A stretch of DNA of 64,000 nucleotides from Sminthopsis crassicaudata (lineage: Eukaryota). Made by a program: the position numbers and the translations under genes. Positions within the stretch are counted from its first letter, which is position 1; each line of letters begins with the position of its first letter. This document shows positions 137-58,587 of the stretch, in pieces. Under the pieces are notes generated by a model. That model did not search any database and had not been told where the DNA came from. It worked only from the letters and a program-made list of their open reading frames with translations. The DNA lies in contig NC_133620.1 of NCBI RefSeq assembly GCF_048593235.1, positions 295,631,765-295,695,764 of the forward strand, read 5' to 3'.

Positions 137-496
137 NNNNNNNNNNNNNNNNNNNNNNNNNNNNNNNNNNNNNNNNNNNNNNNNNNNNNNNNNNNNNNNN
201 NNNNNNNNNNNNNNNNNNNNNNNNNNNNNNNNNNNNNNNNNNNNNNNNNNNNNNNNNNNNNNNNNNNNNNNNNNNNNNNNNNNNNNNNNNNNNNNNNNNN
301 NNNNNNNNNNNNNNNNNNNNNNNNNNNNNNNNNNNNNNNNNNNNNNNNNNNNNNNNNNNNNNNNNNNNNNNNNNNNNNNNNNNNNNNNNNNNNNNNNNNN
401 NNNNNNNNNNNNNNNNNNNNNNNNNNNNNNNNNNNNNNNNNNNNNNNNNNNNNNNNNNNNNNNNNNNNNNNNNNNNNNNNNNNNNNNNNNNNNNNN
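137..496. other. Assembly gap (360 N)
   Basis: Run of N from 137 to 496. Confidence 0.99.
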
Positions 497-4190: not shown

Positions 4191-5118
4191 CTTAAAGCAA
4201 CATACCATTGCAACCATATCTCACAGTTTGCTTAGTTATTTCCCTATTGATTTGGCATCCCCTCTATTTCCAATTCTTAGCTACCACAAAAAGAGCTGCT
4301 ATAAATATTTTTGTACAAATAAGTCCTTTCCCCTTTTTTTGATGTCATTGGGATATAGACCTAGCAGTAGTTTTGTGCAGAATATGCGGTTTTAAAAGCC
4401 CTTTAGGCATAGTTATTGGCCAGAGTTTATAAGTATTTAAAATAGTTTTCCTAGTTCTGATCACATCATCACTTCTTACAGGTTTTTCTGAACCTATCAT
4501 TTTTGTCATTTTTTATGAGGCAATAATATTGCATATATATTGCAATAATATTGCATTATATATGCCTGCATCATAATTTGCTTAACTATTCCCCACTTGA
4601 TGACTACCCATTTTGTTTACAGATCTTTGCTACAACAAAAAGTACTGCAATAGATATTTTTGGACATATGGGTTTTTTCCTCTGTTGATCTCTGTGGGTT
4701 CTTTTTTTGGTCATCTTTGCTAATTTGTTAGCAGTACTTATTGTATTTATTTACATTTCTCTTATATTTTTAGTAATTGGAGCATTTATTCAAAATATGG
4801 TTATTGAGAGTTTGCCAGCTAGGTGGTACACTGAATACAATGATGAGGTCTAGAATCAGGAAGACCTAAATCCAGCCTTAGATACTTCCTAGTTATGTTG
4901 GATAGCTACTTAATATCTGCTGGCCTTCTCCAAACAAACCTGGTTGGTTGACTCCAAGCCGCATGCTCTCCAAAGTTTAGCAGCCAATACTCTTTTGGAG
5001 AGAGAACTCTGGGGTTGAGGATCCCCCTTCGTTCAGTGGAGTCTTCTGGGCTCTGCCCAACCTAATGAATAGCTGCTTCTCCCCTCCTTCATTATAGGGA
5101 CTCTTCTCCGCAGAAGCT

Positions 5119-5258
5119 ATAGGCCGCAATCGTGTCCGCGTGGCCACTAGGAGCTCTGTCTTCACAGGGGTCCAACAACCAACCAGGTTCAGCTATGCCT
5201 AGTAGGAGAACATGGGGAAGAGGCGCTGGAGCTGCGGCTGCCACCCTCTCGCAGAAAC
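5119..5258 (+). pseudogene. Lipoxygenase (ALOX12/ALOX15/Alox12e family) exon 1 relic
   Basis: Reads ATA GGC CGC AAT CGT GTC CGC GTG GCC ACT...TCC AAC AAC..CAG GTT CAG CTA TGC CTA GTA GGA GAA CAT GGG GAA = IGRNRVRVAT..SNN/QVQLCLVGEHGEEALELRL. Collinear with the intact exon 1 at 28076 ([21 protein letters not shown]). ATG is ATA, there are +1 and +4 insertions, and no canonical GT donor. Confidence 0.85.
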
Positions 5259-5499
5259 ACGCTGCCATTAACAATCCAAAAGACTTAGAGAGACGCCAGA
5301 GTCCGGGAGGAAGTGGTTTCCAAATGAGATTCTAAGAACCAGAAGTGTCTGAATCCCAGAGGGACAAGAATTTGGAGCCTAGAGACTCCAGGATCTTGGA
5401 TCTTAGGTTTAGGAGAATTCCTAGATGTCCTTGATTTGTCCTGTTTTCTGCTTTGTAAATATTACTGGCTAGATTTCTTTCTTAAGGATTGTGCCAATT

Positions 5500-5750
5500 G
5501 GTACAGTGGCTTCAGTCAAACAGATCTGTTAAAGACCTTAGCTTAAAAAGGCCAAGGTCTCCCAAGGTATCCAGGGCTGTCTCCAATGATCCTGATCTAT
5601 ATCTGGCCACTTGACCCAGATGACTGGAGGAGAAAATGAGGGAGGTCACACCTTGCCACAGCCCTCCCTCACTTAAATCCAATTCACTTGCTTGTAGAAT
5701 TCCCTCCCTGATGCCATGGTCCTCTTTAAAAAGGAGGGACAAATAACAAT
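5500..5750 (+). mobile_element. Mar1-like CORE-SINE (RTE-derived tail)
   Basis: ggaggagaaaatgaggg...cacagccctccctcacttaaatccaattcacttgc...ccctgatgccatggtcctcttt...ggacaaataacaa resembles the marsupial Mar1 3' region as I recall it. Confidence 0.6.
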
Positions 5751-6995
5751 CCTCCCAGAAACTGTTCCTCTTTCACAAAACCAAAATTTTTTACACTGCA
5801 AGGAGGAAAAACCAGACCCTTTCTGCTCCTTCTTCCAGCCAGATGCTTTCCCATGACTGTAGAGGGACAGCTGATTCCTCTTGCCCCATTGGTGTCCAAG
5901 GATCCCAGCATCCCCTATACACTACTCCTATTGCTACATTTTTCCCCCCATTCAATTCTGTTTCCATCTCCCCATCTTTATGTCTACTCATAATTCTTTC
6001 CCCACGGACCCGGCCTTAGTACTTTGGAGGAAAGAGAGACAGAGAAAGAACCACAGACCCATCTCTTCCCAGTATACCACCCTCTTCAATATCATTTCCA
6101 TCCTGGTCTTCTCATGTCTATGGATATTTTTTTTGGTGTGTGAAGTAGTTGGGGGTGAGTGATTTGCACAGGGTCACATAACTAGTCAGTGTTAAGTGTT
6201 CAAGGCTATATTTGTTCTCAGGTTCTCCTGGCTCCAGGACAGCTGTTCTATCCACTTGTGCTATCTAGTTGCACCTACATCTTACCTTCTGTCGTCTCTC
6301 TTTCTTCATCTTTCTCCACATGATAACCCTCCCTTCTTTTCATTTCTACGTACCTCTCTTTCCCATTTGAAGCCTGACTAGAATCTGTTCTCTTTCCTAG
6401 GTGGGCCACAGGGAAGTATTGGATGTTAAGTCTGGATGTTACGTTCTGCCAACTTTTCTATCCTTCGAGATTTCAATAGTTAGCTGCTGAATCAAGGAGA
6501 GCCTGGGGGTCCCCTTCCTTTGCCCTTATTTAGAAACATGAAAAGAAGTTGCAAAGAGTTAGGTTTTCTCCCACTCCATGGACCCTTCTAGGACCCAGCT
6601 TCTTCCTTTTGATTAAGCCACATATAAAAACATGCCCACTGTGCGTGAAACATCAGATTTGGAGTACTGGTTTTCCTGAAGTCATAGCAGTCCTATATAT
6701 TTGTTATATAACTTTTCCCAACTCCCTCAACTTCCGAACTCTTATCCCCTTAACCTCAGTCTTTCTTAGTGCCTTCCTTTTCTTGTGTCTTCTTCCTTCC
6801 TATATCCTTTCCTCTTCCACTCCCTTCTATTCTTTAACTTTAACCCACCCACCCCCAACTGTTGGGCAAGTAACATTCCATTAATGATTCTCACTTTCTT
6901 TTTTAAAATGAAGGTATTAATTTAGATAACCCCTAAACTCCCTTCTAGCCCTAAATCTTCTGCCCTTTCCTTGTCCTAGACTCCATAATTCTCAC

Positions 6996-7196
6996 TAGTA
7001 GCCTCAGGTAGACAGATGATATCATCCCCTTGCTCCCATTGGTAATAGAGAAACACTTGCTCCTCTTTCTCCTCCATGAGCTGCTCAAAGACTCAATTAT
7101 ATGGTTGCAGAACCAGGCATCCTTCAGCAGATGGTGGATTTTATGAACCTTCACAAACTAGAGGTCTTCTGAGACATCAATATCAAAATTTTCTAT
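6996..7196 (-). pseudogene. Inverted, frameshifted copy of ALOX12 exon 2
   Basis: Reverse strand reads tcctag|ATAGAAAATTTTGATATTGATGTCTCAGAAGACC..TTTGTGAAG..AAGGATGCCTGGTTCTGCAACCATATA..ATCATCTGTCTACCTGAGGCTACTA|gtgag, aligning to 30403-30613 (KDAWFCNHI). 8-nt and other frameshifting deletions; AG and GT retained. Flanking intron sequence (~6650-7420) also matches ~30200-30950. Confidence 0.92.
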
Positions 7197-8099
7197 CTAG
7201 GATATGAGTGTGGGAAAGATAGGAGAATCAGGAGGTAGAGAACTAATCATAGCTCACAAAGCCGTGTATTTTTATAGATTTTATAAATGAGGAGTCTGAA
7301 GCTTCAGAGGTAAAGGAACTTGCCTTATGTCATAAATGTAGGTTTTTAACCTAGTTTGAACCTAGTCAAGAGACTCCTGCTGTGTATAAGACTACTGAAA
7401 AGAAACTTTATAGTTAAATGTCTACACAGGGAAGGCACATACCCACACACACCTTTCATAGAATATCAGAATTGGAAGGATCTGAGGCCATCTTCTCCAA
7501 CTTGTACTTCAACAAAGAACAATTTAACTTCAGCTCAACAGAGATAGTTACTTTTTTGTAAGATACCATGCTAAGTTACAAAAATGAAATTGTCTCTGTC
7601 CCCAGGGAGCTTATATTCTATTGGGAAGATACAACATGACATGTAAATACAAATATTTTTTCTTAAGGAGAGAAGCCTAAGACGCTGTAATGTAGGAGCA
7701 GAGCCTTTAAGGAAACTGGGAATTCTCAGAGGTAAAAGTCAGCCTGTATTAAGGCTGTGAATAGAATTTTGATTTTCATATTCATATGATATTTCATATT
7801 CATTCAATAAGATTTTTCATAGCTGCCGTTTCTGGCTTAGCAGTCAGAAACTCACAAGACAGTTTAAAAATCAATCATTCTGACAATGGCTACATTCTTG
7901 TGGCTATATTGTATCTGTATAATAGTATATTTCATCATGAATACTCTGAAATCAGGATTGCTTAGTGATATAAATTGCTTTGCTGGTTCTGCTCACTTCA
8001 TTTTATTTTAGTTCGTGCAAGTTTTCCTATATAAATTTCTCTGAAACCCTCCTTTTCTCCATTTCTTATAATATAATAGTAACCTATTATATAACTCTT

Positions 8100-8830
8100 A
8101 GGTATTTCACGGTGGTGACTGATATCAATGCCTTTTCCTTGCCCATTTTGAAAAGCTGTTCTCTTCTGCTTATCACTTATGATCTAGAATTTACATACTG
8201 AGATGTATAATTAACAGAAGTTTGTCCCTAGAAAGGATCTTGGAATCTGAGCTAACTTCCACATTCCTTTATCTGTTGAAATCCTACTCATTTACTTTAG
8301 ATGGAAAATGCCATCTGCATTCAGAAAGAGAACTATGGAGTCTGGATACAGATACAAGCATATTGTTTTCACCTTTTCTTCTTCTTTTTTTTCTTTCTCA
8401 TGATTTTTCCCTTTTGTTCTGATGACTTTAATTTCATCATCTGATATGTCTGTTCATATCCTTTAACATATTTACCAGTTGGAGAATGACTTGTATTCTT
8501 ATGTGACACAGTTCTTTATATATTTTAAAATGAGATCTTTATCAGAAACACTGGCTATAAAGGTATCTCTGATAGAACTTAATGGGTAAGCAGACTTTTA
8601 GATATAGAGAAAACCTTGAAAATTTTTATTCAATATAGGGATACCTAAATATGAAGTACAAACTATGAATTTACACTTTGATTGATTAATCTATCTCCTT
8701 AATTTTGAAAATGAGGAAACTGAAACCCAAGGTCATCCAAGGGAGTAAGGAATAATTTGTGCTTGAATACTTCCTATTACAGCAAGTTCATTGCTCACAT
8801 CCTTACCTGACAGTGGCTCTGTTGAATAAG
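8100..8830 (+). repeat. Paralogous copy of ALOX12 intron 1 segment
   Basis: tttgaaaagctgttctct...tatcactta.gatctagaattta and tatgaatttaca.t.tgat...agcaagttcattgctcacat match 29560-29760 and 30000-30180 in the same orientation, interrupted by L1 fragments. Confidence 0.7.
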
Positions 8831-9014
8831 TGGCAGAAACTGAGAATGTTATCTTCATCTTCTAAGTGTAAATGATTGATTTTTTTTTTTTTTTTAGCTT
8901 AAAAAATTTATCCCTATCCTGGGCTGGAAACAGGGGTCCAAAGATGGCATGCTTATCAGACTGAAGATGTAAGCAGCAGTACAAGTAGAAGGAATGGGTG
9001 GAAGAGGCAAAGAA

Positions 9015-9160
9015 ATGAACTTAGGGCTGAATGAAAGGGAAAGCTTCCTAACATTGAGCATAGTTCCAAAATGTAATGCGCTGCCTTCAAAAGTACTAGA
9101 CTCCATTTCACTGGAAATTGTCAAAGGCTGGATGAGTACCAATTGGATAGATAGCATTCA
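9015..9160 (+). mobile_element. CR1/L3-type 3' fragment
   Basis: aaagcttcctaacatt...ccaaaatgtaatgcgctgcct...cactggaaattgtcaaaggctggatga resembles the CR1/L3 (MIR3) 3' end. Confidence 0.5.
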
Positions 9161-9418
9161 GCCTATACCCAAGGTATAGGGACCTGCTCTTGTACTTTGT
9201 TAAGAGAATTTTACTGTATTGGTCTCTAAACTGAATAGCTGAAGTCACACATAGCAGACCTTGAGACAGACTTTTAGAGATCAAAGTAGTGATTTAATTG
9301 TCACTTTCAGAGAGGGGAAATATTGCAAACCAGAAGCTCTTCAGGGAAAGAGACCTTCCCTGTTAAAGGAAAGGTAGAGATTTTATACATAAATCATTAA
9401 GTAGGAAAGTGGTTACAA

Positions 9419-9580
9419 GGGGCAGCTAGGTGGCGCAGTGGATAGAGCACCAGCCTTGAATTCAGGAGGACCTGAGTTCAAATCTGGTCTCAGACACTTC
9501 CTAACTGTGTGTCCCTAGGCAAGTCACTTAACCCCAGCCTCAAAAACAAAAACAAAAAAAAAAAACAAAAAAAAAAAACC
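9419..9580 (+). mobile_element. WSINE1-type CORE-SINE
   Basis: ggggcagctaggtggcgcagtggatagagcacc...gagttcaaatc...aaccccagcctc plus A tail. TSD gaaagtgg(a)ttacaa at 9405-9418 and 9584-9598. Confidence 0.9.
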
Positions 9581-9689
9581 CTTGAAAGTGGATTACAATA
9601 TAATTCTTTTGATTGCTTCAAATCTTGAGGGTCAATGAACTCCCACACCTACCCCTACCCTCAGCACAGAACTAAAGTTCTAATGCGCC

Positions 9690-12050
9690 ATGCACTATGC
9701 GTATGCCCTCACCCAGTACAAAAGATGTGACGCCTCTCCCACTCCCCACACATTCTCTAGTACTGGAGCTCCTGGAAAAAAATGATCTTCCCTTTCACTC
9801 TCCTCCTGGGGCAGACAGCTCTCCCATAGCATTTTGCCAAAGGATGGGAAAACTCCAAGTGTAATCAAATATGAAGATTCCAATCTCCTATTCCCAGCAC
9901 TGGTAGTTCCCCTAGTTATACCATCTGACTGCTTCTGTGACCTTACAAATCTCTGCCCCTTTGCCATAACCTGCAATGAATAAAAGGATAAATCTATATA
10001 CTTCCAGGCATCTCAACCTATGTTGCTCAAGGAACAAAATAATTGCAATGCTTGCATAAAATCAGAGACTAGTACTATTTTTTTCATATTATCAAGGGAG
10101 GTGATATGAGAAATCAGTCATCTTCTTTGACTCAAAAGGTTAGACTGGGTTACATTCTAAATGACCATTCAGTTCTAACATGCATGAATCTGACTAAAAC
10201 TTTTATCATCATTTTTTTTCCATCATCTGCATCACTACTATAGTTAATAGGTCTTCAAAGTTATTGCATTTATGTGCAGTATGTGTAATATACCATTTAT
10301 CTTGTTCCAAATTTACTTCTTCCAAGCTTCATGGGATTAGGCCAGGCCTCTTTCCACTACAAGCTAGTGGCTTTTTCTCTTCCAGCTCCAAGTCTGTTCC
10401 ACTGCACAGGTTCATGAACCATAATTGAATGCACTATTACAGGTATGGGTATATGTTGGTTTTTTAGTATGGAAAGTAGATGGTGGTGGGAAGAGCATTC
10501 AGTGTTCAAATTCTGATCCTGACTGTTATAAGGGACAAAATACAACTTCTCTGGCCTAAATTTACATTTTGGCAAAAAAGGGAATTGAATTATATGATTC
10601 TCATGGCTTTAAAGCACGGAGCATATGGGATTCTCTCACTGATCACAACTGCTTTCCTGATGACTACTACCCTCTAATTCTAGGAGTTTGGAACTTAATT
10701 TTGAGAAATTGTGTGAAGATGTTCTTCCTAATTCCTGGATGTTAATGAAAAAGGATCCTTCCTTTAGGAAGTCTGTCCTGCTTCTTCCAAATTGGCAAGT
10801 TTGATACATGCTATCATCCCCACGGACAGCCAGGTCTATCTACACCACTACCCACCCAAAGCGAAACAGGCTTCATTCCCCTTTCCTAAGAAGATGCACT
10901 GCGAGACCATATTCCCACTTCACGACGGTCCGGCAAGACCCTTCTCCCGCACTATTCTCATTAGGAGATGAGGGAAACTAAGTCGTCATTCAAAAAAAAT
11001 GCCCCGTATTGGGAATTCACAGAACTTTTCATTGTTCGAAGGACTCGAAAAGCCGGCAGGGTCGCTTTGGGGGTCACATGACTTTTCAGAGATCAGACTC
11101 GGCAAGATTTCCCTCCACCCCTTATTTCCTCCATCGCAGGGGAGAGAGTCCTATTTGCCCCCGGACTCTGTGGAAACTGAAGGCCTGCGAATGTTGGCCT
11201 CAACACCCCTTCATTTCGACGTTTCTCTCTGCAATTTTTTTGGGGGAAGGGCCGGTCTCTGGCGTTCTACGCCTGCCCCTTTTCCGGCTCTAGTGTCTTC
11301 CTTTCCCCAATCCCGGAACTCCTGGATGGGCTCCTACGCAAAATTTGATCTTGCCCGTCTCCTACTTTTTTTGTTGGGTCCGCCCCTTCCGGATAAAACT
11401 CCGCCTCCCGGCGCCAATTCCCTTCAAGGGGTGGGCTCCTTCCCCAGACCCCGCCATTGTAGCCCCTCCAGGCCACACTCTTCACACGCACTTCCCCCAC
11501 TTCCCGGTCCTCAAGATAAACTCCTCCCGAGGAGAGGTTCCCCTTTTTCTGGCTTCCTCCCGCTCTCTAGGTCCTCCTCTTTAGGCTAGAGTCCCGCCTC
11601 CTTCCACGCCTCAATTAGGTTCGGTCCACCCCTGCTCGAGCTCGGCCCTCCCCACTCTTTCCTCCCCCAGTCCCGGCCCGCCTCGATCTTGTCAGTCCTC
11701 GCTCGCGCTCTTGTGCTTTACTTCCCGCTCTCCTTCTGCTAGCTGGAACCGTGTTCCACCCCAGCCTTTGCACTCCCTCCTAGGTCTTGGGCTAATGCTC
11801 GGCTTGGTTTACTTCCTTTGTGCTAGGCCCCACATGACCGCAGGGAACGTGAAGGAGGCCAATATGGGCCATGACTTATTGAAACTCCTTTGGTTGGACC
11901 AGAGAACGTTTGCCAGGAATCGAGGGAGCAGAGGAGGGCGAGGCTCGAGAGAAAACGGTAGTAGGTGGTAGTGGTGGAGCCTGGAAAACAAGAGGCGGGA
12001 GCGGGGATGAGAATTTGCTAGTTGGCCCTCGGGCCACTAGATGGTGCAGT
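9690..12050 (+). repeat. Segmental duplicate A of ALOX12 3'UTR + RNASEK promoter + RNASEK exon 1 relic
   Basis: Collinear blocks with ~41330-43750, e.g. tggggcagaca..cattttgcc.aaggatgggaaa; AATAAA 9979-9984; gaagatg.tcttccta; agaagatgcac; agccggcaggg. TTG GTT TAC TTC CTT TGT GCT AGG CCC CAC ATG ACC GCA (11804-11842) aligns codon by codon to [19 protein letters not shown] (24/39 nt identical). Confidence 0.85.
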
Positions 12051-12060
12051 TTATAGACTG
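10860..12060. promoter_or_regulatory. Orphan CpG-island-like promoter (copy of RNASEK promoter)
   Basis: Visibly CpG-dense in an AT-rich region. GTCACATGAC at 11073-11082, GC boxes (11379-11386, ~11400, ~11592), ETS core CTTCCGG at 11386-11392. Confidence 0.65.
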
Positions 12061-13347
12061 CCCGGCCTGTTGTCAGGAACACTCATCTTTCTAAACCAAA
12101 CTTAGCCTCTGCCACTTGCTCGTTGTGACCCTAGACAAGTCACTTAGCAATGTTTGCCTCATTTCTTCATCTGTAAAATGGCAAATCACTACACTTTCTC
12201 TACCAAGAAAACCTTAAAATTTCCTGATGAATCGAAATCGGACAATGCATTTTTGCTTATTTTTGTAACATACACGCTGAACGTATTTGTGCGCGCGCGC
12301 TTACGTATGTGTATGTGTTTTAGTGAGAGAGACGAGAGGTAAAAGGAGAGAGACAGAAGAGGGGCAAGAAGAGAAAGAGACACGAAAAGTCGAACGAAAC
12401 TGAAAACACATAAATGTAACTAAAGCTCTTTTAACACAACATCCATGGATATAACAAAATCTCTTATCTATCATCATTCTGTAAAACTACTAAGGGTAAT
12501 CTGTTCCATTTTGCTCTAAATTTTCTTCTTTCAAGCTTCACAAGGGTACTTCAGTTCTGGTATATCATAAATCATTGAATCAATCAGATTCTGTTTTCAT
12601 CTTTCTAGAATAAGTAACTTACTTTTCAAACGCTTTAAGATTTAAAGCAATTTGTGTACATTTTCTGTGATCCTGGCAAGCCTAAGATAAATAAAACATA
12701 TTATTTCATAATATTTAATTTCCCCCAATTATGTGTAAAGACAATTTTTAACATTACTTTTAAAAAAATTTCAAATTCCAAATTTTCTTCTTCTCCCTCA
12801 GTTACCCTCCCTCTCCCTCCAGGAAGCATGTAATTTATTGCAGGCAAGACCAATCAGAAATGGATTTAGCAATTAAAAGAAATGAAGTTTCTGATAAAGA
12901 AGTTTCAGTTGAATAGTGGGGTCTGAAGCCAGAATATAAGGACAGTGAAATGAATTGAAGATAAGGAAATGGGGTCAATGAGAGTTTTCATCTTTTTTTT
13001 CCTAACATAACTAATATGGAAATTTATTTTGCAATATTGCAATAGGTATAGCCGAAGTTAAATTGCTTACTTACCATCTCAGAGAGTGGGGAAGGAGGAA
13101 TGGAGGAAAAGAATTTGGAACTCAAAATTAAAAAAAAAAAATATTAAAAATGATCTTTTACATGTAATTAGGAAAATAAATTAGTAAAGGGGGAAAAAAG
13201 AACTATCATTGCAAGTATTTGAACCCAGGATAGGTCTTAACTATTTTCACTATACTATGCTGTTTCTTCAGTGACACTAAAATGCTTAGTCTAATTACAC
13301 AAAAGCAACACAATCTGTTAATATTTCACAATGTTTTGAAGCTTGTA

Positions 13348-13714
13348 TGTGGTTGGTTATTCTGACCAGCACAACATAAATGGGCTAGTGGTGGTTGAAA
13401 ATAAGGAGACTGGGTTGTTAATTCAACAGCTGTTTATTAAGAGAAATCATGATGCTTATATATCTTAAAACCATATGTTATTATGAAAAGTATTGTTCTG
13501 TGACCAGCCCTGGTTTCTGTTTTCTATGATCTAACTCTCTGAAGCATGTTGAGTCTGGAGATTCAATCTTGTGTAAAGTTCATAATGCCTCAGTAATTGT
13601 TCCAGAACCTTATGTTTTCTCACGATTTCAAGCTTAAATACACCCTTGATTAATCTTAGGAGAAGGGGAACATCCCAGTTACCGAAGTCTCTAGCTTTCT
13701 GGGAGTTCTTTACA
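13348..13714 (-). mobile_element. 3' LTR of betaretrovirus-like ERV
   Basis: On the - strand the polypurine tract AAAAAAGGGAGAGA (13715-13728) abuts TGTAAAGAACTCCC. Internal AATAAA (tttatt ~13435). Ends in CA near 13348. A second family member lies at 17613-19015. Confidence 0.8.
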
Positions 13715-13715
13715 T

Positions 13716-14480
13716 CTCTCCCTTTTTTATTTTTTGAAGTGCTCTCAAGTCTTGAAGTCTAAGATCCTGTCTGTGGACATTCTCAGCAATTCTTTTAAAA
13801 TGGTCAGAAAACAGCCTACCAGAATAAGTCTAGATACAGATGCATGTAAGTAAAATTACAGCAAATGCTATGAGTATAATTTCATGCCCAATGGCATGGA
13901 ATGTTCCTTGTCTTAATCCACTCAGCAATTGTTTGGGCACTGGTCAGGTTCTAGATTTTCATGTCATTCTTTATCTAACATTAGCAATCTTTTTTGAAGA
14001 TCTTCAATATCCAATGAAACATTTGAATTTCCTCATAACTCATTAAGGTAATTTCTAATTTTATTCCAATTCCATTCTGACTCACTGTATTCCTTGTTAA
14101 CCACACAGAAACTAGTAAACCTGTAATCACACACCAATCTTTGTCTAATCCTCAATTTTTCTACTTCTTATCCTATTTCAAGGCCATACTCCCTTAATTG
14201 ATTTGTAGCTTCACAAAACTCCTTATTAATTTTATTCTGTATACTAAACCCTTTAGAGACGTTCAGAGTAAGTTCATGCAAATAATTAGCTTGAACTATT
14301 GCTTTTGAACAGTGGTTACAGACATAGCAAGTAAGGCACTGGAAGCTAAAATAGAAATTAATGCAATTATATAAAAAAAACAACACATGAATTACATCTT
14401 TTCTTTCTATTTCTGCAGAGCAAATGTTCAATGTTCTCCAAGGAATGGTTTGTTCAAGTGTGATACCAATTATCACTCTG
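13716..14480 (-). pseudogene. env: ERV env relic, beta-type TM subunit
   Basis: Reverse strand: AIVQANYLHELTLNVSKGFSIQNKINKEF..NQLRE..IG*EVEKLRIRQRLVCDYRFTSFCVVNKEYSESEWNWNKIRNYL (CX7C at 14105-14131), membrane anchor IILIAFAVILLTCICI (~13840-13880), basic tail LQKIKKGE running into the PPT. SU probably extends to ~15300 but is not recognisable to me. Confidence 0.85.
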
Positions 14481-17612: not shown

Positions 17613-17881
17613 TGTCAGTGCACTCCCAGGAAGCTAGAGTCTTCAGTAACTGGGATGTTACTCTCCTCCTAAGATTAATCAAGAATGCATTTAAGCTTGA
17701 AATCATCAGAAAACAAGGTTCTGGCACAATTACTGGGGCACTGTAAACTTTATAGACAAGATTGAGTTTCCAGAAACTAACAATATGTTTCAGAAGGTTA
17801 AATCACAGAAAACAGAAACCAGGGCTAGTCACAGGACAGTGCTTTTCTTAATAACATATGGTTTTAAGATATATAAGCAGC

Positions 17882-19029: not shown

Positions 19030-20450
19030 ATATTATCATCATTGACAAATGAAGAAAAGCCAATTTCAGAAAATAATTATTCTAAGTCACATAGTAAAAT
19101 ATTATTATAAAGAATAGAATTCAAATTCACTTACTGACCTGCATTCTACCTTTGTTTCTCTGTATCATCTTCAAGCATTTCATTTTTCCACAAATTCATG
19201 AGTACAATTGAAATTTTTGGTGTGAGCACCGTGATGCTTTTGTAGGAAGGAAAAGTGTTGAGTAGTAAGTAGAAAGAATATTTAATTTAAAGACCTAAGT
19301 TCACCACTCTATTTCAGTGGTCAAATCACAACTTCTCTAGGCCCAAATTTCTATTTTGGCAAAATAAGGAGGTTTGGAGCATAAAGCATTCTCTCATTAA
19401 TTTTAATTGCTTTTCTCATGATTCCTTGGCTTTTGCTTGGATCACAGACTCCTGGGGCTTGTAACTTAATTTTGAGAAATGATCTGAAGATGTTCTTCCT
19501 AGTTCTTAACTGTTAATGGAAAAAAAGAAACAAAGGATCTTTCCCTCAGGAGGTCAGTTCCTGGTTCTTCTTATTATCCTCCTTCCCCCTTTCTCTGGAA
19601 ATTTCAGAAAGGTCATCCCCATCAGACAATAGATCTTACATTACATACTGCCCCCTAGAACCCACAGGTGGAAAAGAATTTCATTTCCCTCTCTCCTAAG
19701 AAGATGCACAGCAAGATAGTAAGCTGTTTGGGCATTCTCCCAGTTAAGGGATGAGAAAAACTCTAACATCTAAAAAAAAAAAAAAAAAAAAAAAAACAAA
19801 AAAAAAACTATGAACGAAAAATCCAGAACCACTAATTGTTGGCTAGATTGCAGAGTCAGGCAGGCCTACCTTCCAAGTCACTTGATTGGGGTGTTCAGTT
19901 AAGTGAGGCCTCCCACTCTCTGATCCCCCCCAACCTTCATATTTGTCTTTGTCCAGACCGTACTATATTTGTGGGGTGAAAGGAGAAAGATTTGTATTTG
20001 CCTCTGGACTATGTTGAAGCTGCAAATATTGTGAAATGTCCTCTTCTGCATCCTTTCATTAAGTTGTTTCTCTGGCTGGTCTTTGGTGTTCTGTTCCATT
20101 AGCTCAAGTTCTTTCTACAAGACAAGTCCAGAACTTCCAGTACTTCTCCCTGTACCATGCCTCCCTTTCTCCTTTCTCCCTCTCCTCCCCTCCCCTCACT
20201 CTTTCCCCGCCCTCTAGTCGAGCCTCTTCTGTCTCTAGCTCTGCCTCCCAAAGCCCCTCTGTGGTTTTCTTCCGCACTTTCAGGCTCTGTTGTGGGCCCA
20301 TAGCCGGTGACTTGCAGTGTAAAGAGCCCATTAGGACCATGAAAGGAAAGAGTGAGCCGACTTTGGTATGGAGGGGAGGGGAGTGAGGAGAAAGATAAGG
20401 TGCAAAGGAGGGGTGAGAATTTAGGGAATTAAAAGACTGAATGGGGTTAG
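19030..20450 (+). repeat. Segmental duplicate B of RNASEK upstream region + exon 1 relic (CpG-depleted)
   Basis: Matches ~42290-43750 and 10430-12020 (aacttaattttgagaaat..tgaagatgttcttccta; ctaagaagatgcac). CTC TGT TGT GGG CCA TAG (20285-20302) = LCCGP* versus RNASEK LCCGPK. Confidence 0.8.
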
Positions 20451-20833
20451 GAAGAAAGCTTTTATTAAGCCCCTACTTTGTGTTGGTCTAGAATACAAAA
20501 AAGGGCAAAAGAGATCCTACTTTCAAGGAATTTAGTCTAATGAAATTAGGAAAACAAGGTCTGGGGAGTTTGAGCTTGATGGGATTTAAAAATGCTGAAC
20601 ACCCCAAAATATTGGGGTTCAGGGCCAATTAAATGGAGGTGTCTCAAAATAATTTATAGGCTTAGAACCATCTCCAAATCAAGAGACAAAATTTTTTTAT
20701 TAGCTGTTGGCTGACAGGTTAATTTCCAAGCTACTGAAGTGGGGAACAAACAATTTATAGAGGTAATTCTTTGTTGGGGGGGGCCATGTTTAGGTTATTG
20801 TAGTTACCTTTTAGTTTTAGAACGCTAATTTCA

Positions 20834-25603: not shown

Positions 25604-25841
25604 ATTCCTGGATTCCAGGAATGGAGCTCTATTTTTTTAGACTTTGTGCATCTTCACTTGTATAGTGTCATTAAGTCAAGCTGGGAGACAGACCTGCTCA
25701 TAGATTGAGGTGGGAAGTCAGTGAAACTGAGACACTGTGTTTGGTTCTGAGTAACTTGAGGTTTTTCTTTTTGTTTTCTCCTTCCAACTGAACTGGTATG
25801 CCTGGGTACCCCATGCTCCATGCACATGCTTTCATCAAGCA
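25604..25841 (+). pseudogene. Lipoxygenase exon 12 and exon 13 relics
   Basis: TTG TGC ATC TTC ACT TGT (LCIFTC, 25644-25661; intact gene MCIFTC) and CTG AAC TGG TAT GCC TGG GTA CCC CAT GCT CCA TGC ACA TGC TTT CAT CAA GCA (LNWYAWVPHAPCT-C-FHQA, 25788-25841; intact [13 protein letters not shown]...VHQA). Correct order and intron-like spacing; acceptor decayed to CAA. Confidence 0.8.
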
Positions 25842-26039
25842 CAAAGAAAATGGTGACAACTATTCACCAGGAATCCCATTAGATACTGAGCCAAGTTCAG
25901 CCATAGTGAGGGGATGGGCAAAATGGGCAGTTAAAACTGAGGGCCAAACCTTGGATGAAGAGTGGAAGACAAATGTCTTTCCCTATTCCGTTCAATCCTC
26001 TAAGCAACTAAAGTGATGTTCCTTAAGCTCACATTCAAC

Positions 26040-26540
26040 TGTCACTACCTACCCTCACTCTATAAATGCCAGGGGTTCTTTATTATCTCCAGGCTCAAAA
26101 GTAAAATCTTGTTTGGCAAAGAAAACCTTAAATTAGGTCTCCTCCCTCCCATATTTCCAGTCTTCTTACACCATGCTCTCCACGACATACTTTTGGATCC
26201 AGTGACATCCTTGCTATTCCATGGACAAGATACTGTTCTCTATCTCTAAGCTCCAGGCTTTTCTCTGGCAGTCCCTCAGGCCTAAAATGCTCTCCTTTCT
26301 CATCTTCTGGATTCCTTTATGTCCCCACCAAAAAGCTATCTTCTACAGGAAGCCCTTCCCAACCACTCTTTAATCTTAGTACTTTCAGTCTGCTAATTAT
26401 ATCCTATTTATCCTACATAGGCTTGGCATGTACATATCGGTTTGCTTTTTGTTTTCCCATTAGATTATGAGCTCTTGGACTTGACTCTTGCCTTTTTGTA
26501 TGTCCTAGTGTTTAGCATAGTATCTGATACTTAACGTTTA
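26040..26540 (+). mobile_element. L2 LINE 3' fragment
   Basis: cccattagattatgagctc...ttgtatgtcctagtgtttagcatagtatctg resembles the L2 3' end. Confidence 0.55.
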
Positions 26541-26918
26541 CAGAAAAAAGATAGATTTGGGATGAAATCTGGGCTCAATTCTGACAGTACTTTTGTGACC
26601 TTGGACAAGCTCCTTCTCTGAGTCTAAAGTTTCTCCTAAGAAATGGGGAGGAACTGGCTAGACCTGAGTGGTGGAGAGGCAGGGAGCTAGACCAGAAAGA
26701 AGCTTAAAGTTCCTTCCAGTTCTAAATCTAAGATCCCATTAAGGGATATTAGGGAACTTTACTAGTCTTTTGGGAGTGATATGCTTGTTTTATTGTTAGG
26801 TTTCTCTGGAATAGCACAAAGAAGAGTATTTTTCAGGATCTGGGAAGCTAAGTCATGCTGAGCTGTTTGAGGGAAGATCTGGGCTCCCTGAAAAAGAGAT
26901 CATAGAAAAGAATGTTCA

Positions 26919-27145
26919 ACTGTTTCAAAGTCCAATTCTTTTTGTACAGCAAAATAACTGTTTGGACATGTATACATATATTGTATTTAACTTATACTTT
27001 AGGATATTTAACATGTATTGGTCAACCTGCCATCCGGGGGAGGGGGCGGGGAGGAAGGAGGGGAAAAGTTGAAACAAAAGATTTTGCAATTGTCAATGCT
27101 GGAAAATGGCCTATGCATAAAATTTTTGTAAAAAGAAAAAAAAAA
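26919..27145 (+). mobile_element. Short L1 3' end with polyA
   Basis: L1 3'UTR-type sequence; 15-bp TSD agaaaagaatgttca at 26904-26918 and 27146-27160. Confidence 0.85.
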
Positions 27146-28075
27146 AGAAAAGAATGTTCAGTAAAACCTGGCCTATGAATTCCTGCAGCCAAGCCCAGTG
27201 GAGAACAGTGTCACCATCTGAGCCTGCCCTGCCCCTTTCAAACACGCTTTTCTGAGTTTACTAAAATTCCCCTTAAACTTTAAGTTCCACACCTCAAGTC
27301 CCTTACCTATTCTCAGTATTCTCAGAACCCTCTCTTTAAAAAAAAAACCCAACAACTTCTATGTTGGAAGCAAGGGACAGATAAATAATGCTTTTGCTGC
27401 ACTGAAATAAACATGATTTGGGCCAGGAGTAAGAATACTGACACTAGCTGTGTGATTTTAGACAAGTCATTTAAGCTCTCTGGATTTCAGTTATCTCTTC
27501 TGTAAAACAAGGATTCTACTACTTATGGGAGGAATGTGAGGAAAATACCTGGGAAAAATTTAAAACTCTAGAAATGAGTCATGTCATAAAACATGGATTG
27601 TATAAGCTGGAAGAGAACACAGAAATCATGTCCTACTCTGAAAACCATCTTTAAAACCAAATATAACAAAAATTTAAGAGAAGTCACTTTGTCAGACTTA
27701 AGCTATTTAGAATTCAGGAAGGGACAGTGGGGGGAGCCCCTAACCAAAAAAAGGCAAGTTTCCTGTTTCTGATAACCAAGCCCTTTTATTTCCTATACTA
27801 GGAGTCCTAATCACCTTAAAAAGAAACCCCAGACATTCCCCCTTCCCTGCCCATTTTCCAGGGCAGGTCCAGGCCCATCCCCTGGGTGGGGAAAGTGGAA
27901 GCTCCAAGATTTTGAGAAGGGTGGGGACAGCTGTAGGTACATAGGTGGGTATGGGAAGGGCTTCTTCACTAAAAGGCTTGAGTCTTCGCCTTGGAGAATC
28001 ACTGGACAGCAGTAAACAGGGCTTGGAGCAACTTTCCCGTTACTCTTCTCACAGCAGCCAGAGTCTCCAAGACAG

Positions 28076-35772: not shown

Positions 35773-35806
<34 letters not shown>

Positions 35807-41563: not shown

Positions 41564-43189
41564 CATATATGTAAACTATAAGTCTTCTCAGTATCTATTG
41601 CTCAGGGAACAAAATAACTGCAATACTGGTATAAGGCCACTGTACCATCCAGATGATATCCTAGGATACAGTCATCTTCCCTGGGACAGTTCTCCAAACA
41701 GCCTTTAAAGTCAGCTACCTGTTGATATAACTAAATCTCTTTTGAAGTATTTTGATCATCATCTTGTACCACCACTGAGTAAATGATTTTATGCCCTTGT
41801 TATAAATTTACCTCTTTTAAGTTTCATGGGGATACTTTGTAGTTCTGGTATGCCATAATTTACAATCTTTAATAAAATCTTTTCTTCATCTTTTCAGAAC
41901 AAGTAACAACTTATTTCTAAAACACTTTAAAATTATTCAGAGTATGGTATGTCCATTATCTTGTGATTTTTGAAAATCTATCTAGATTTATTTAAATAAA
42001 ACAGGGAGTATTATCTCTATTTTATACATGGCTACACAGATTTAGAGGCTAAACAGCTTGCCCTTATATCACCAAGGTAATATCAGAGGTGAGACTTTAA
42101 CCCAGGATTTGGGTTCCAAATCAACCTTGCTTTTTCTACTGCACCAAGCTGACTTTCCAATGATAAACACTAAATCTGTTAATCTGCTCACAAAGAAGCT
42201 CCTCCAATCCAGTTTTTTAGTAGCTCATGATGTTTCAAGGCTTATAACGTGTTTTCTTTGTAACAACCTTATGTTGTAGGAATTAAAAATAGTATTTCAT
42301 CATTGTCAGATAAGGAAACTGAGATTCACAAAAGTTAATCAAATTACTCAAAATCACGAGTAGAATAGAAGCAGGTCTGCTGATGACCTAGACAGGCCTC
42401 TTGCTGCTACAGCTACATTTGGCATTCTCCGTGCCAGCTCCTAATCTGTTTTACTTTTCTCTAAGTCCATGAGGCAGAATTAAATACAATATTGCAAGTG
42501 TAGGCACATGACTGTTTTGTAGGAAGAAAAGTGTAGGAAAGAGCATTTAATGTAAATACCTAAGTTCAAGTTCTGACCCTGATGTCAATTCTGTTATAAT
42601 GAACAAAATACAATCTCTGAGCCTAAATGTTGGCATGAAAGGGGATGGAATCATATGGCTCTTTTCTGATGACTCCTTCCCTCTAGCTCGGGCCACAGAA
42701 GCACACCGATTCTTGGGGCTCGGCGCTTACCTCTGACAAATGGGCTGAAGATGATCTTCCTAGTTCCTGTTAATGAAAAAGAGGGAACAAAGGCCCTTTC
42801 CCTCAGGAAGTCTCAATCCCTTGTTCTTCCTACATCCTTTTCCTCCTTTCTCCTGATATTTTCAGAAGATCTAGTTGACAGATTTGAAAATATATATGCC
42901 ATCATCCCATCCCCATCAGACAACCAGGCTTAATACTGCATCCCACCTAAAGCCTAAGGTGGAAGCAGGTCTCGTTCCCCTCTCCTCAGAAGATGCACCG
43001 CCGGATAACATCCCCTTCACTACAGTTGGCCAAAGCCCTTCACCTACATTCTCTCAGTTAAGGAATAAGGGAAACTAGGCCAATACATGAAAAAAAAAAA
43101 AAAAAAAAAAAAAAAGTGCTTCGAACAGGGAATCCACAGTTCCACTCACAGTTGGCTAAGCTAGAGAGCCGGCAGGGGAACCTCCAGGA

Positions 43190-43218
43190 TCACGTGATTC
43201 TGAATTTCAGTCACGTGA
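43190..43218. promoter_or_regulatory. Tandem TCACGTGA (CLEAR/E-box) motifs in RNASEK promoter
   Basis: TCACGTGA at 43190-43197 and GTCACGTGA at 43210-43218, ~400 nt upstream of the ATG in a CpG-rich region. Confidence 0.7.
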
Positions 43219-43615
43219 AGAGCCCCTCCTTCTTGTTTCGTCCTCCTGCGGAGCGTACCATGTTCAGCGGGTAAAAGAATTCTATTTGTTCTCGGATCCG
43301 ATAAAATATGTGTTCGTGGGAGCTGGAAATGCTGCAGATTTCATGCTCGAGATTTCTTCTTTACAGCGTTTCTCTCTTCTATTCCCTTTTCTGGGAATAG
43401 CCGCTCTACGGGGTGCTAAATCTGTTCCCTACCCCCCCCCCCCCGCTCTCTAGTCCCGCCTTCTCTACCTGGGCCACTCCTTCGGGCTCGAGCTGGGTGC
43501 TCCCTTCCTGGGGAGTCTCTCGTCCCATCCATTCCAGCTTCGCTAAGCCCCTCGGTCTTTTATTCAGTTTTCTGAGACCCGCATTGCATTCCAGTTGCTC
43601 CAGCCTGGGATCACC

Positions 43616-44801
43616 ATGGCTTCCCTCTTGTGTTGCGGGCCCAAGCTGGCCGCCTGCGGCATCGTACTCAGCGCCTGGGGAGTGATCATGCTGGTGAGGA
43701 GGCCGAGGGAGGAGGGTGCAAAGGAATCGGGAGCCCAGCTCTGGGGAGTGAATGACTAAAACCCTTTCGGGGTGGAACCTGAGGGTTGTTTATGGGAGTC
43801 GTGGGAGCCGACATGGGGAGAAAGGGATGGTGGGAAAGCAATAAGAATGGGAACGGGAGAGGAAGGCGTTAAGTCGGACTGTGTTAAGTCTCTGCTATAG
43901 GCCCGTCAACTGCTGAGCTCCAGGATTCAAACGCAAGTGGCAAACCCTATTCTCAGGGAGCTCAGTCCGGTGGTATGAAGTTGAGGTTAGGAAGAGTGGA
44001 AGGTCTGGGAAGCTTGAGGAACAAGAACTGGTTAAGGAGAGCTTGATTCTGAATCTGACAAAGAAGTCTGGGGTGCAGCTTCCCATAATCAGCTGCTGGC
44101 CTCCAGAATGGGGTAGAAAGCCAGAGGAGGAAGTCCGTCTCGGGTTAGTGACCCTCCCTCCCCCGAGAGATGTGCAGTGTGGGTGAGGTGTGTTGCCGGA
44201 TCTCAAAACGTGACCTGTTATTTTCTGAGGAGAGAAGGGTGGAAGTGGAGGGGATGGTCAGTTTAAGAAGTAGGCGGCCCATTCTGGTTTAGTCTGACCC
44301 GGGTATTGCCAGATCTGAGACCTGATGTTATGACAGAGGGAAGAAGGGCAAGCCAAGGTTGGTTCTTGGGAAGTGACTGGGAACCTAGAGTTGTTTCACT
44401 TTACCCGTTATTTTCGCGTTATTTCCTCAGGTCCTTCTTGGAATTTTCTTCAATGTCCATTCTGCTGTGCTAATTGAGGATGTACCTTTCACTGAAAGTG
44501 ATTTTGAAGAGTGAGTTGTAGGGGTGGGAGGGATCTTCCAGGCCCCTTAAAAGCTTGGAGAGTTGATAGAAAACCCGGAGGGCTGGACTTCAAGTATCCT
44601 GGGGGCAGGGAGGGCAGGGAAGTCTAGCAGCTGCCCTCACCCTTACTTTCATCCTCCAGGGGTGGTCCTCAGAAAATCTACCAGCTTTATGAACAAGTGA
44701 GCTACAATTGCTTCATTGCTGCTGGCCTCTACCTCCTCCTGGGAGGCTTCTCATTCTGCCAAGTCCGACTCAACAAGCGCAAAGAGTACATGGTCCGTTA
44801 G
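43616..44801 (+). CDS. RNASEK: Ribonuclease kappa / V-ATPase V0 subunit f, 3 exons, 99 aa
   Basis: Exons 43616-43693, 44431-44510, 44660-44801 give [99 protein letters not shown]. Confidence 0.97.
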
Positions 44802-48644: not shown

Positions 48645-48725
48645 AGCCTGTCTGGAGCAGCACTCTCAATACTGGCATGGCTTTCCTTCAGGTGCCAATA
48701 TTTCTGTGCTGCTAAAGCCAGGGAG
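48645..48725 (-). ncRNA. MIR195: pre-miR-195 hairpin
   Basis: 48694-48714 is the reverse complement of UAGCAGCACAGAAAUAUUGGC (miR-195-5p); complementary 3p arm at 48654-48675. Confidence 0.95.
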
Positions 48726-48999
48726 GCCAAGGTGGTGGTGGGAGTGGGTAAGGAGAGCAAAGGTACGGAAAGATTTCATCAGTTGAGGTAGCACTTTTCC
48801 CTGAACGCTTAGGATTTCTCCCAAAGTTTCTGGGAGGGTATTCTTCAAAGTCTCCGCAAGGTGGCCCTAGGATCTTCTCTGGTGAGATACTCCTGTGTAT
48901 TTGTGGGATCTATCCATTTTGTTTGTCATCCGTCCTCCAGGGCGTCCAAGGTGTCCCGCTCCGGGTCCAAGTTGTGGTGGTGGCAGTGATGCCTTCCTT

Positions 49000-49078
49000 A
49001 CCCTCACTCTAACATCACAGTGTGGTTTGGACTTGGCCACAACACCGAACAAACCACAGTGTGCTGCTGGGGCGGAGG
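49000..49078 (-). ncRNA. MIR497: pre-miR-497 hairpin
   Basis: 49049-49069 is the reverse complement of CAGCAGCACACUGUGGUUUGU (miR-497-5p); 3p arm at 49008-49029. Confidence 0.95.
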
Positions 49079-54010: not shown

Positions 54011-54519
54011 GAGTCTCTGATGTCTCTGGATAGATTTGGGGAAATAGTCGAGGAGAAGGGAAGAACAAGATGCCAGCTTTGGATCAAATCCCAGGTCTAG
54101 GATTTTGGAATGTCATTAACATCACTTCACTATCTCCTGTTAAATGAAGAATATCATTAAGAATTGGTTGAGTCTAGAGTTTTCCAAAAGCGGTTTTTTT
54201 GAATTCTCCCCTGCATGGGATAGGGAATTAGGATTCTGGTGACTGGTGCACCAGATCTTGGGAAGAGCCGCACTTTGGCGATGGGAGGTGGGGAAGAAGG
54301 ACCCTTGACTTCCAGCACTTAAGCCATATTTAAGTCCGAAGGCTTGCAGAGGCTGCCCTTCAGGAAACATATCCTGAGAAAAGGTTGGGGAGGAGAGGGA
54401 GGCCGTTCCAGGGGAACAAGAAGGGCCCAGACTAGGAATCTGCCTATTCAAAATCCTGAAGAACAAACACCCTGGTTCTTTGACTCCCACGTCTCATTCA
54501 TTTCCAGGCCACCCTCATC

Positions 54520-58587
<4,068 letters not shown>

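What the first reader, a model, noticed from the sequence alone, without database searches (positions are those of the whole stretch)
10860..12060. Duplicated RNASEK housekeeping promoter kept as an orphan CpG island after its coding exon died
Seen: the block is paralogous to the RNASEK promoter and exon 1. The ATG is TTG and the coding relic is only 24/39 nt identical, yet CpGs, GC boxes, an ETS core (11386-11392) and GTCACATGAC (11073-11082, at the position of the RNASEK CLEAR site) persist. It seems to carry ~250 bp of extra GC-box-rich sequence (~11290-11550) absent from RNASEK, and has a candidate donor CG|GTAGTA at 11958. Known: methylated CpGs decay in the germline, MiT/TFE factors bind CACGTG and CACATG boxes, and the human RNASEK promoter region also gives an antisense transcript over ALOX12 (ALOX12-AS1). 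Inference: a still-active, possibly MiT/TFE-responsive promoter captured by duplication, driving an unannotated RNA in either direction or acting as an ALOX12 enhancer. This is my best candidate for an undescribed functional element here.
Basis: partly seen in the sequence, partly recalled or inferred. Interest (0 to 1): 0.75.

Follow-up and report, generated by a model that had tools for sequence, protein, structure and literature searches.

The report
Orphan CpG island from duplicated RNASEK promoter
An old partial copy of the RNASEK gene's start has lost its coding exon but still looks like an unmethylated CpG-island promoter, whereas a sister copy has decayed completely; whether it makes an RNA is not shown.

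Summary
Window 10750-12106 is the longest CpG island in the 64 kb: GC 0.545, CpG o/e 0.62, 61 CpGs. CpG retention runs on to about 12420. The flanks hold 1 and 2 CpGs.

The island lies inside copy A (10480-12140) of a three-fold repeated unit made of the ALOX 3' end plus the RNASEK 5' end. Copy C (42540-43800) is the live RNASEK promoter. Copy B (19290-20500) is about as diverged as A, but its CpG o/e has fallen to 0.16.

Copy A changes in sequence as fast as dead copy B, yet it keeps its GC content and gains new CpGs. There is no GC-biased excess and no recent gene conversion. The coding exon is dead: ATG is now TTG, and no protein similarity remains.

The best reading is a germline-unmethylated, promoter-type orphan CpG island. 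In one public study the island sits on a single 2.4-kb contig at depth 59, against 0-8 in the unique flanks. A second study covers the region evenly. Library types are not on record, so activity is suggested, not proven.

The MiT/TFE idea is weak: one of the two parental CACGTG boxes is lost and the other is mutated at its CpG. No splice, start site or cross-species conservation could be tested.

The scan has noted other orphan CpG islands elsewhere in this genome. This is a new member of a known kind.

The parts
10480..11290 (+). Copy A, distal part: homologue of the RNASEK upstream region (C 42540-43400) and of copy B 19290-20050
   Evidence: BLAST; MAFFT; K2P at non-CpG sites is 0.41 to C and 0.49 to B
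10750..12106 (.). CpG island by the GC >= 0.5 and o/e >= 0.6 criteria: 1357 bp, 61 CpG, the longest in the window
   Evidence: profile
11073..11082 (.). GTCACATGAC: the CpG-to-CpA derivative of the first parental CACGTG box. The second parental box has no counterpart in A
11291..11545 (+). Extra 255 bp absent from B and C. It holds GC boxes (11380, 11450), CCGGAAG (11386-11392, minus sense), CCAAT (11307, 11414) and CACCC (11429). Its origin is unresolved
11546..11803 (+). Homologue of the RNASEK proximal promoter and 5'UTR. It is C-rich on the + strand, with GC boxes at 11593 and 11677
   Evidence: collinear alignments (z 4.6 to C, 5.2 to B); skew
11804..11880 (+). Relic of RNASEK exon 1. ATG is now TTG, 24/39 nt are identical, and no protein-level similarity is left. 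The parental donor position is degraded
11958..11963 (+). It is not homologous to the parental donor, and the only small contig that crosses it reads through
   Evidence: table 8 (X9 record, 11761-12008)
12107..12420 (.). AT-rich tail that still keeps its CpGs (GC 0.40, 14 CpG, o/e 1.09). It includes a short CG/TG microsatellite. The CpG-retaining domain ends here
   Evidence: sequence
10196..12589 (.). Span of the single 2395-nt contig at depth 58.9 in run X1 (study P1). Unique flanks are at 0-8
   Evidence: tables 2 and 8; shares of 0.89-0.92 in X1-X4
19290..20500 (+). Copy B: the same unit with its CpGs decayed (o/e 0.16, 7 CpG over 19600-20500). It serves as the internal control for a dead copy
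42540..43800 (+). Copy C: the live RNASEK promoter, exon 1 (ATG at 43616) and the start of intron 1. Two CACGTG boxes lie at 43190-43197 and 43211-43218
   Evidence: exon 3 at 44628-44798
5107..9732 (+). Rearranged ALOX pseudogene upstream of copy A. The exon 1 relic is at 5107-5252, the exon 2 relic is inverted at about 7098-7157, and the exon 13 relic is at 9682-9732. It shows that the duplicated unit was the ALOX gene plus the RNASEK 5' end
   Evidence: tblastx

Best explanation
The block is the promoter half of an old partial duplicate of the ALOX12-RNASEK unit. The duplicate ended in RNASEK intron 1, so it never carried a whole RNASEK gene, and its exon 1 has since decayed.

The promoter part has stayed free of DNA methylation in the germ line. 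This is inferred from CpG content, not measured. As a result its CpGs are at the equilibrium of unmethylated DNA rather than eroding.

The likely mechanism is the ordinary one for CpG islands. Dense unmethylated CpGs, together with sites for ubiquitous factors (Sp/KLF GC and CACCC boxes, one ETS site, CCAAT boxes), recruit CXXC proteins and H3K4 methylation, which keeps de novo methyltransferases out. Such an island usually fires low-level, often two-directional, non-coding transcription.

I take this to be a promoter-type orphan CpG island that still holds CpG-island chromatin. It probably makes an unspliced or weakly processed non-coding RNA, with no demonstrated selected function.

Shown: the duplication, the dead exon, CpG retention with sharp borders, decay of the sister copy, and the local enrichment in one study.

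Inferred: the hypomethylation, the factor binding and the transcription.
For: - CpG retention: o/e 0.62-0.64 and 61 CpG in A, against o/e 0.16 in sister copy B and 0.24 for the window.
- Sharp borders: 1 CpG in 10196-10749 and 2 CpG in 12421-13340.
- Retention continues into an AT-rich tail (o/e 1.09 at GC 0.40). This fits hypomethylation better than a GC-raising process.
- The copies are old and similarly diverged: K2P 0.39-0.49 at non-CpG sites.
- Substitution balance: copy A has W>S 33 against S>W 35, like live copy C (32 against 22) and unlike dead copy B (20 against 44).
- Several CpGs are new in A, at places where B and C carry unrelated dinucleotides.
- No recent gene conversion: the longest word shared exactly with C is 14 nt.
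- Promoter-type motif load is greater than in the parent: 5 GC boxes, 5 CACCC, 1 CCGGAAG and 5 CCAAT.
- GC skew switches from negative to positive at the relic start codon, as it does at the real RNASEK start. Such skew goes with unmethylated CGI promoters in human (PMC3787257).
- Run X1 holds one 2395-nt contig over 10196-12589 at depth 58.9, with unique flanks at 0-8. X2-X4 of the same study hold 0.89-0.91 of the sampled words.
- Run X5, from another study, covers island and flanks evenly at 3-6. This excludes a copy-number artefact.
- A small run with RNA-like contig statistics (X9) has a 248-nt contig at 11761-12008, just after the predicted start region.
- About half of mammalian CGIs are orphans, and many show promoter marks (PMC2944787).
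Against: - No library type is on record. The tool's 'RNA?' label is a guess, so the X1 enrichment could come from ATAC, a histone ChIP, CXXC capture or RNA. It could equally be a methyl-DNA pull-down, which would mean somatic methylation.
- No splice joint, start pile-up or strand information was obtained. All runs were contigs, and the listed joints are SINE artefacts.
- Copy A's lineage carries more private substitutions (94 in 579 shared columns) than dead copy B (84) or live copy C (60). There is therefore no nucleotide-level constraint.
- The functional parental boxes (CACGTG, twice) have not been kept.
- Conservation in other marsupials was not testable.
Confidence: 0.6

Rival explanations
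1. Selected new function. The retained promoter drives a useful lineage-specific non-coding RNA, for instance an antisense RNA over the ALOX pseudogene or cluster, or it acts as an enhancer or boundary for the ALOX12-like gene 16 kb downstream.
For: - The CpG-island state has persisted over K of about 0.4 while copy B died.
- The island has grown beyond its parent: 1357 bp against 888 bp, with an extra 255 bp rich in GC-box, ETS and CCAAT motifs.
- The C-rich (+ strand) arm is 600 bp long, against 200 bp in the parent. That makes leftward, antisense transcription prone to R-loops (PMC3787257).
- The island is enriched in study P1.
- lncRNAs that are fossils of protein-coding genes are known (PMC5577775).
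Against: - There is no sequence constraint relative to the dead copy.
- No spliced transcript and no Rfam hit were found in or near the island.
- CpG-island state can be sequence-autonomous and needs no useful product.
- No contact or expression data link it to ALOX12.
Confidence: 0.25
2. MiT/TFE (TFEB/MITF)-responsive promoter. The island would keep the lysosomal CLEAR-type regulation of RNASEK through GTCACATGAC at 11073-11082.
For: - The motif sits at the aligned position of the first parental CACGTG box.
- Its reverse complement reads as an M-box-type TCATGTGAC. MiT-family factors are known to bind this, which I state from general knowledge and did not test here.
Against: - The parent has two TCACGTGA-type boxes. 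Copy A has no CACGTG at all.
- The second box is unrecognisable in A, and the first lost its central CpG although the island keeps CpGs elsewhere.
- This is the pattern expected without selection on these sites. A single 10-mer 730 bp upstream of the relic start is weak evidence.
Confidence: 0.1
3. The CpG and GC richness comes from GC-biased gene conversion, a recombination hot spot or recent conversion from the live promoter. On this view it does not reflect hypomethylation or promoter activity.
For: GC-rich, CpG-rich patches can arise in this way. The block is GC 0.55 in a 0.41 window.
Against: - W>S (33) does not exceed S>W (35) in A's lineage.
- The AT-rich tail 12107-12420 keeps CpG at o/e 1.09 without being GC-rich.
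- The longest exact word shared with C is 14 nt, and identity is about 0.68 throughout, so there was no recent conversion.
- The borders of CpG retention are sharp.
Confidence: 0.05
4. A silent relic, somatically methylated or Polycomb-coated. The island would be unmethylated only in the germ line, as a passive consequence of its sequence. It would be repressed or methylated in tissues, and the P1 enrichment would reflect a repressive or methyl-DNA assay.
For: - Orphan CGIs are often methylated during development (PMC2944787).
- The library type of P1 is unknown.
- No clear RNA was seen.
Against: - X9 shows a small contig in the 3' part of the island, in a run with RNA-like contig statistics.
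- The motif load is that of a ubiquitous Sp/ETS/NF-Y promoter.
Confidence: 0.25

Closest known systems
Orphan CpG islands (Illingworth et al. 2010, PMC2944787)
   Same: A CpG cluster that meets the island criteria, lies away from any recognisable gene start, and has promoter-like sequence features and sharp borders. It is locally enriched in one public data set.
   Different: Its origin is traceable: it is a duplicated housekeeping promoter, with a live parent and a decayed sister copy in the same 64 kb. Its methylation state and chromatin marks have not been measured.
Non-processed (duplicated) pseudogene fragments that keep their promoter, and lncRNAs that are fossils of protein-coding genes (Hezroni et al. 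2017, PMC5577775)
   Same: The coding capacity is destroyed (ATG to TTG, no protein similarity, exons 2-3 never included), while the 5' regulatory region survives.
   Different: No transcript has been demonstrated here. The fossil lncRNAs of that study are defined by expressed, syntenic RNAs.
The RNASEK promoter of the same window (copy C, 42540-43800)
   Same: Shared ancestry over about 1.3 kb, the same GC-skew switch at the start codon, and GC-box content.
   Different: Copy A has no CACGTG boxes. It has 255 bp of extra sequence, a longer C-rich arm, more CpGs (61 against 39) and no coding exon.
GC-skewed, R-loop-prone unmethylated CGI promoters (Ginno et al. 2013, PMC3787257)
   Same: A strong strand asymmetry that flips at the presumed start.
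   Different: The positive-skew arm on the + strand is only about 150 bp long. The long arm points the other way. R-loops were not measured.

Membership tests
CpG island (sequence definition) | Length >= 200-500 bp, GC >= 0.5-0.55, CpG o/e >= 0.6 | tested here: met
   10750-12106: 1357 bp, GC 0.545, o/e 0.62. It just misses the stricter 0.55/0.65 cut-offs as a whole. The 500-bp windows from 11001 and 11251 pass them; the one from 11501 reaches o/e 0.61 only.
Orphan CpG island (Illingworth 2010) | Not at the start of a known gene | tested here: inconclusive
   No coding exon, Pfam, PDB or Rfam match lies in or next to it, and the open stretch is not unusual (19/500 shuffles). No genome annotation of this species was available to me.
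Orphan CpG island (Illingworth 2010) | Unmethylated in vivo (CXXC capture or bisulfite) | not testable with these tools
   Inferred only from CpG retention compared with copy B.
Orphan CpG island (Illingworth 2010) | Promoter marks or transcription initiation | tested here: inconclusive
   A 2395-nt contig at depth 58.9 over the island in X1, with flanks at 0-8 and even cover in X5. The library types are unknown and no start or strand data exist.
Duplicated (non-processed) pseudogene fragment of RNASEK | Homology to the parent that includes non-coding flanks and intron sequence | tested here: met
   Homology runs from the ALOX 3' region into RNASEK intron 1 and stops at about C 43800 in both A and B.
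Duplicated (non-processed) pseudogene fragment of RNASEK | Coding capacity disabled | tested here: met
   ATG to TTG at 11804 and 24/39 nt identity. No protein similarity. No relics of exons 2-3.
CLEAR / MiT-TFE target promoter | One or more GTCACGTGAC-type boxes near the start | tested here: not met
   Copy A has no CACGTG and one CACATG variant 730 bp upstream. Copy C has two TCACGTGA boxes.
CLEAR / MiT-TFE target promoter | Binding of, or response to, TFEB/TFE3/MITF | not testable with these tools
   No data. The literature search for RNASEK with TFEB gave nothing on its promoter.
lncRNA fossil of a protein-coding gene (Hezroni 2017) | A stable transcript from the relic locus | tested here: inconclusive
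   Only one 248-nt low-depth contig (11761-12008) in a run with RNA-like statistics. No run is on record as RNA.

The most novel reading that the evidence does not exclude
One ancestral housekeeping promoter exists here in three old copies with three fates: live gene promoter (C), fully decayed (B) and gene-less island (A). Copy A has kept, and even enlarged, its CpG-island state for roughly 0.2 substitutions per site while its sequence drifted at the neutral rate. If the island is conserved across marsupials and active, it would be a lineage-specific regulatory element or non-coding RNA promoter born by promoter capture. It would also be a natural experiment on what keeps a CpG island alive without its gene.
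Probability: 0.3. Interest if true: 0.55.

Novelty: new member of a known kind. Interest (0 to 1): 0.4.

Why it matters
Orphan CpG islands are common, but their origins are rarely traceable. Here the parent promoter, a surviving gene-less copy and a decayed copy lie side by side.

The locus therefore gives a clean within-genome comparison of what separates a CpG island that persists from one that erodes. The surviving copy has gained GC-box, ETS and CCAAT sites. It has lost the gene-specific E-boxes and shows no nucleotide-level constraint.

If the island proves active, it adds an unannotated promoter next to the ALOX12 cluster of a marsupial. If it proves silent, it shows how long a promoter's epigenetic state can outlive its gene. 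Either way it is an instance of a known phenomenon, not a new one.

Tried and rejected
- Coding gene in the island: rejected. No meaningful Pfam match (one sub-threshold hit, E 0.042) and no PDB match. The 205-codon open stretch is reached by 19/500 shuffles.
- Structured RNA: no Rfam family in the island. The only hits in the window are mir-497 and mir-16/195 at 48646-49082.
- Extra 255 bp as a tandem copy of neighbouring promoter sequence, or of C or B: rejected (z 0.3-1.7; TRF found nothing).
- Recent gene conversion from the live promoter: rejected.
- GC-biased conversion: no W>S excess.
- Copy-number artefact behind the X1 depth: rejected, because X5 covers the region evenly.
- Splice joints: all involve the SINE at 9419-9499 and its fragment at about 12124-12151, so they are repeat artefacts.
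- Exact look-up of the island's ORF in public assemblies, as a back door to other contigs: nothing on record.
- Cross-species conservation: no tool here holds other marsupial genomes. 'Organism B' (X12) matches at 100% over 168 and 957 nt, so it is the same or a near-identical taxon and says nothing about deep conservation.
- Literature on RNASEK with TFEB, and on ALOX12-AS1 with RNASEK: nothing on the promoter.
- Spliced gene models were not joined. Gene identities rest on exon-by-exon searches by reference.

Full report
**Context of the window**

Exon-by-exon searches place the finding in a region that matches what I know of human 17p13.1.
- A lipoxygenase gene runs from about 28040 to 41099 on the + strand (Pfam Lipoxygenase, E 6e-12 for one exon).
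- RNASEK follows. Exon 1 has its ATG at 43616 and matches residues 1-27 of ribonuclease kappa chains in the PDB at E 3e-12. Exon 3 (44628-44798) matches residues 52-98 at E 1e-25.
- Next come a SANT/Myb exon of the C17orf49/BAP18 type, then mir-497 and mir-16/195 on the minus strand at 48646-49082.
- Last is a BTB zinc-finger gene of the BCL6B type at about 54484-58134.
- The window is GC 0.41 with CpG o/e 0.24.

**The observation**

- Scanning with the classical criteria finds six islands. The longest is 10750-12106: 1357 bp, GC 0.545, o/e 0.62, 61 CpGs.
- Its borders are sharp. The 554 bp to the left hold one CpG.
- To the right, an AT-rich tail (12107-12420, GC 0.40) still holds 14 CpGs at o/e 1.09. 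The next 920 bp hold two.
- The block is paralogous to the RNASEK 5' region. BLAST and MAFFT align A 10480-11290 with C 42540-43400 and with a third copy, B 19290-20050.
- Collinear local alignments extend the homology through A 11546-12140, B 20050-20500 and C 43400-43800, at z 4.6-5.9 against dinucleotide shuffles.
  - GTCACATGAC at 11073-11082 lies opposite the first parental CACGTG box.
  - CTTCCGG is at 11386-11392.
  - TTG at 11804 lies opposite the ATG, with 24 of 39 ungapped identities, the best of 400 offsets.
  - GTAGTA is at 11958.
  - The extra segment 11291-11545 has no significant match in B, in C or in A's own neighbouring sequence.

**What was duplicated**

- A translated self-comparison shows relics of lipoxygenase exons upstream of copy A. 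The exon 1 relic is at 5107-5252, an inverted exon 2 relic is near 7098-7157, and an exon 13 relic is at 9682-9732.
- A further 3' relic lies at 25785-27221.
- The repeated unit was therefore a lipoxygenase gene plus the intergenic region and the first exon of RNASEK.
- In both A and B the homology ends at about the same place in RNASEK intron 1. No relics of exons 2-3 exist.
- The coding relic in A is dead. The frame through it has no similarity to RNASEK or to any PDB chain.

**Three copies, three fates**

- At non-CpG sites the copies differ by K2P 0.49 (A-B), 0.41 (A-C) and 0.385 (B-C). They are old and of comparable age.
- Over matching spans, CpG o/e is 0.64 in A, 0.55 in C and 0.16 in B. 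Copy B shows what this much time does to the sequence once it is methylated.
- Copy A has not been refreshed from C. The longest shared exact word is 14 nt.
- In the 579 columns shared by all three, private changes number 94 in A, 84 in B and 60 in C.
- The direction of change is balanced in A (W>S 33, S>W 35). It leans towards GC in C (32 against 22) and towards AT in B (20 against 44).
- Only 5 of A's 24 distal CpGs are shared with C. Several sit where B and C carry unrelated dinucleotides, so they are gains.
- Taken together, A drifts in sequence about as fast as a dead copy, yet it behaves compositionally like an unmethylated promoter.
- This argues for long-term germline hypomethylation. 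It argues against GC-biased conversion, and also against nucleotide-level purifying selection.

**Promoter-like features**

- Copy A carries five GC boxes, five CACCC boxes, one full CCGGAAG and five CCAAT boxes. That is more than the parent has.
- It has no CACGTG, whereas the parent has two TCACGTGA boxes. One is unrecognisable in A. The other has lost its central CpG (CACGTG to CACATG), although the island keeps its CpGs elsewhere.
- This weakens the MiT/TFE idea. The variant is an M-box-type site in reverse complement, but that rests on my general knowledge and was not tested.
- GC skew flips from negative to positive at the relic start codon, as at the real one.
- In A the C-rich arm on the + strand is 600 bp long, against 200 bp in the parent. 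The G-rich arm is only about 150 bp.
- By the human rules that link skew to unmethylated CGI promoters (PMC3787257), this fits a two-directional promoter whose longer R-loop-prone arm points leftwards. That is an inference only.

**Public reads**

- No holder is on record as RNA, and all kinds are guesses.
- Four runs of one study (X1-X4) hold 0.89-0.92 of the sampled words of 10700-12400. Four runs of another study hold 0.41-0.63.
- I laid four runs on 8500-14400.
- X1 shows a single 2395-nt contig over 10196-12589 at depth 58.9, while unique flanking bins are at 0-8.
- X5 shows short contigs at depth 3-6 over island and flanks alike. The block is therefore single-copy, and X1 is locally enriched by an order of magnitude.
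- The contig statistics of X1 are DNA-like: about 2.3 million contigs of about 280 nt.
- A block centred on the island with shoulders on both sides looks like a chromatin-type peak. A methyl-DNA pull-down cannot be excluded.
- X9 has RNA-like contig statistics. It holds a 248-nt contig at 11761-12008, which begins at the relic 5'UTR and reads through the proposed donor at 11958.
- All listed joints involve the SINE at 9419-9499 and are artefacts.
- 'Organism B' (X12) matches at 100% identity, so it gives no information on deeper conservation.

**Verdict**

- The block is a gene-less, promoter-type CpG island descended from a duplicated RNASEK promoter. It has very probably been kept unmethylated in the germ line for a long time, and it is locally enriched in one public data set.
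- Transcription, direction, any function, MiT/TFE response and conservation across marsupials remain open.
- It belongs to the known class of orphan CpG islands (PMC2944787) and of pseudogene-derived promoters (PMC5577775).
- Its special value is the internal three-copy comparison.
- The scan has flagged several other orphan CpG islands elsewhere in this genome.

Noticed in passing
window 48646-49082 (-): mir-497 (96 bits) and mir-16-family/mir-195 (54 bits) precursors lie between the BAP18-type and BCL6B-type genes. This fits the MIR497HG cluster and confirms the synteny.
   Followed up: no
window 5107-9732: A heavily rearranged lipoxygenase pseudogene lies upstream of copy A. Its exon 1 relic lacks an ATG, its exon 2 relic is inverted at about 7098-7157, and its exon 13 relic is at 9682-9732. 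It is compressed to 4.6 kb, against 13 kb for the live gene.
   Followed up: partly
window 25785-27221: Another relic of a lipoxygenase 3' end (exons 13-14, with an in-frame stop) lies directly upstream of the live ALOX12-like gene. No RNASEK-promoter relic follows it.
   Followed up: no
window 12107-12420: An AT-rich stretch (GC 0.40) has CpG o/e 1.09 and a short CG/TG microsatellite at about 12280-12320. It lies inside the X1 contig and seems to be part of the protected domain.
   Followed up: partly
window 9419-9499 and about 12124-12151: A SINE core reaches summed contig depths in the millions in all four runs. It causes all the apparent 'joints' in the read table. A fragment of the same family marks the right end of copy A's homology.
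   Followed up: no
The label probably hides the same or a near-identical taxon. I observed this only and built nothing from it.
   Followed up: no
window 13453-13706 vs 17622-17879: A 260-bp pair at 85% identity, in inverted orientation, flanks the provirus region. LTRs would be direct repeats, so this is unexpected and I did not examine it further.
   Followed up: no
window 137-496: A run of 360 N. I left it untouched.
   Followed up: no
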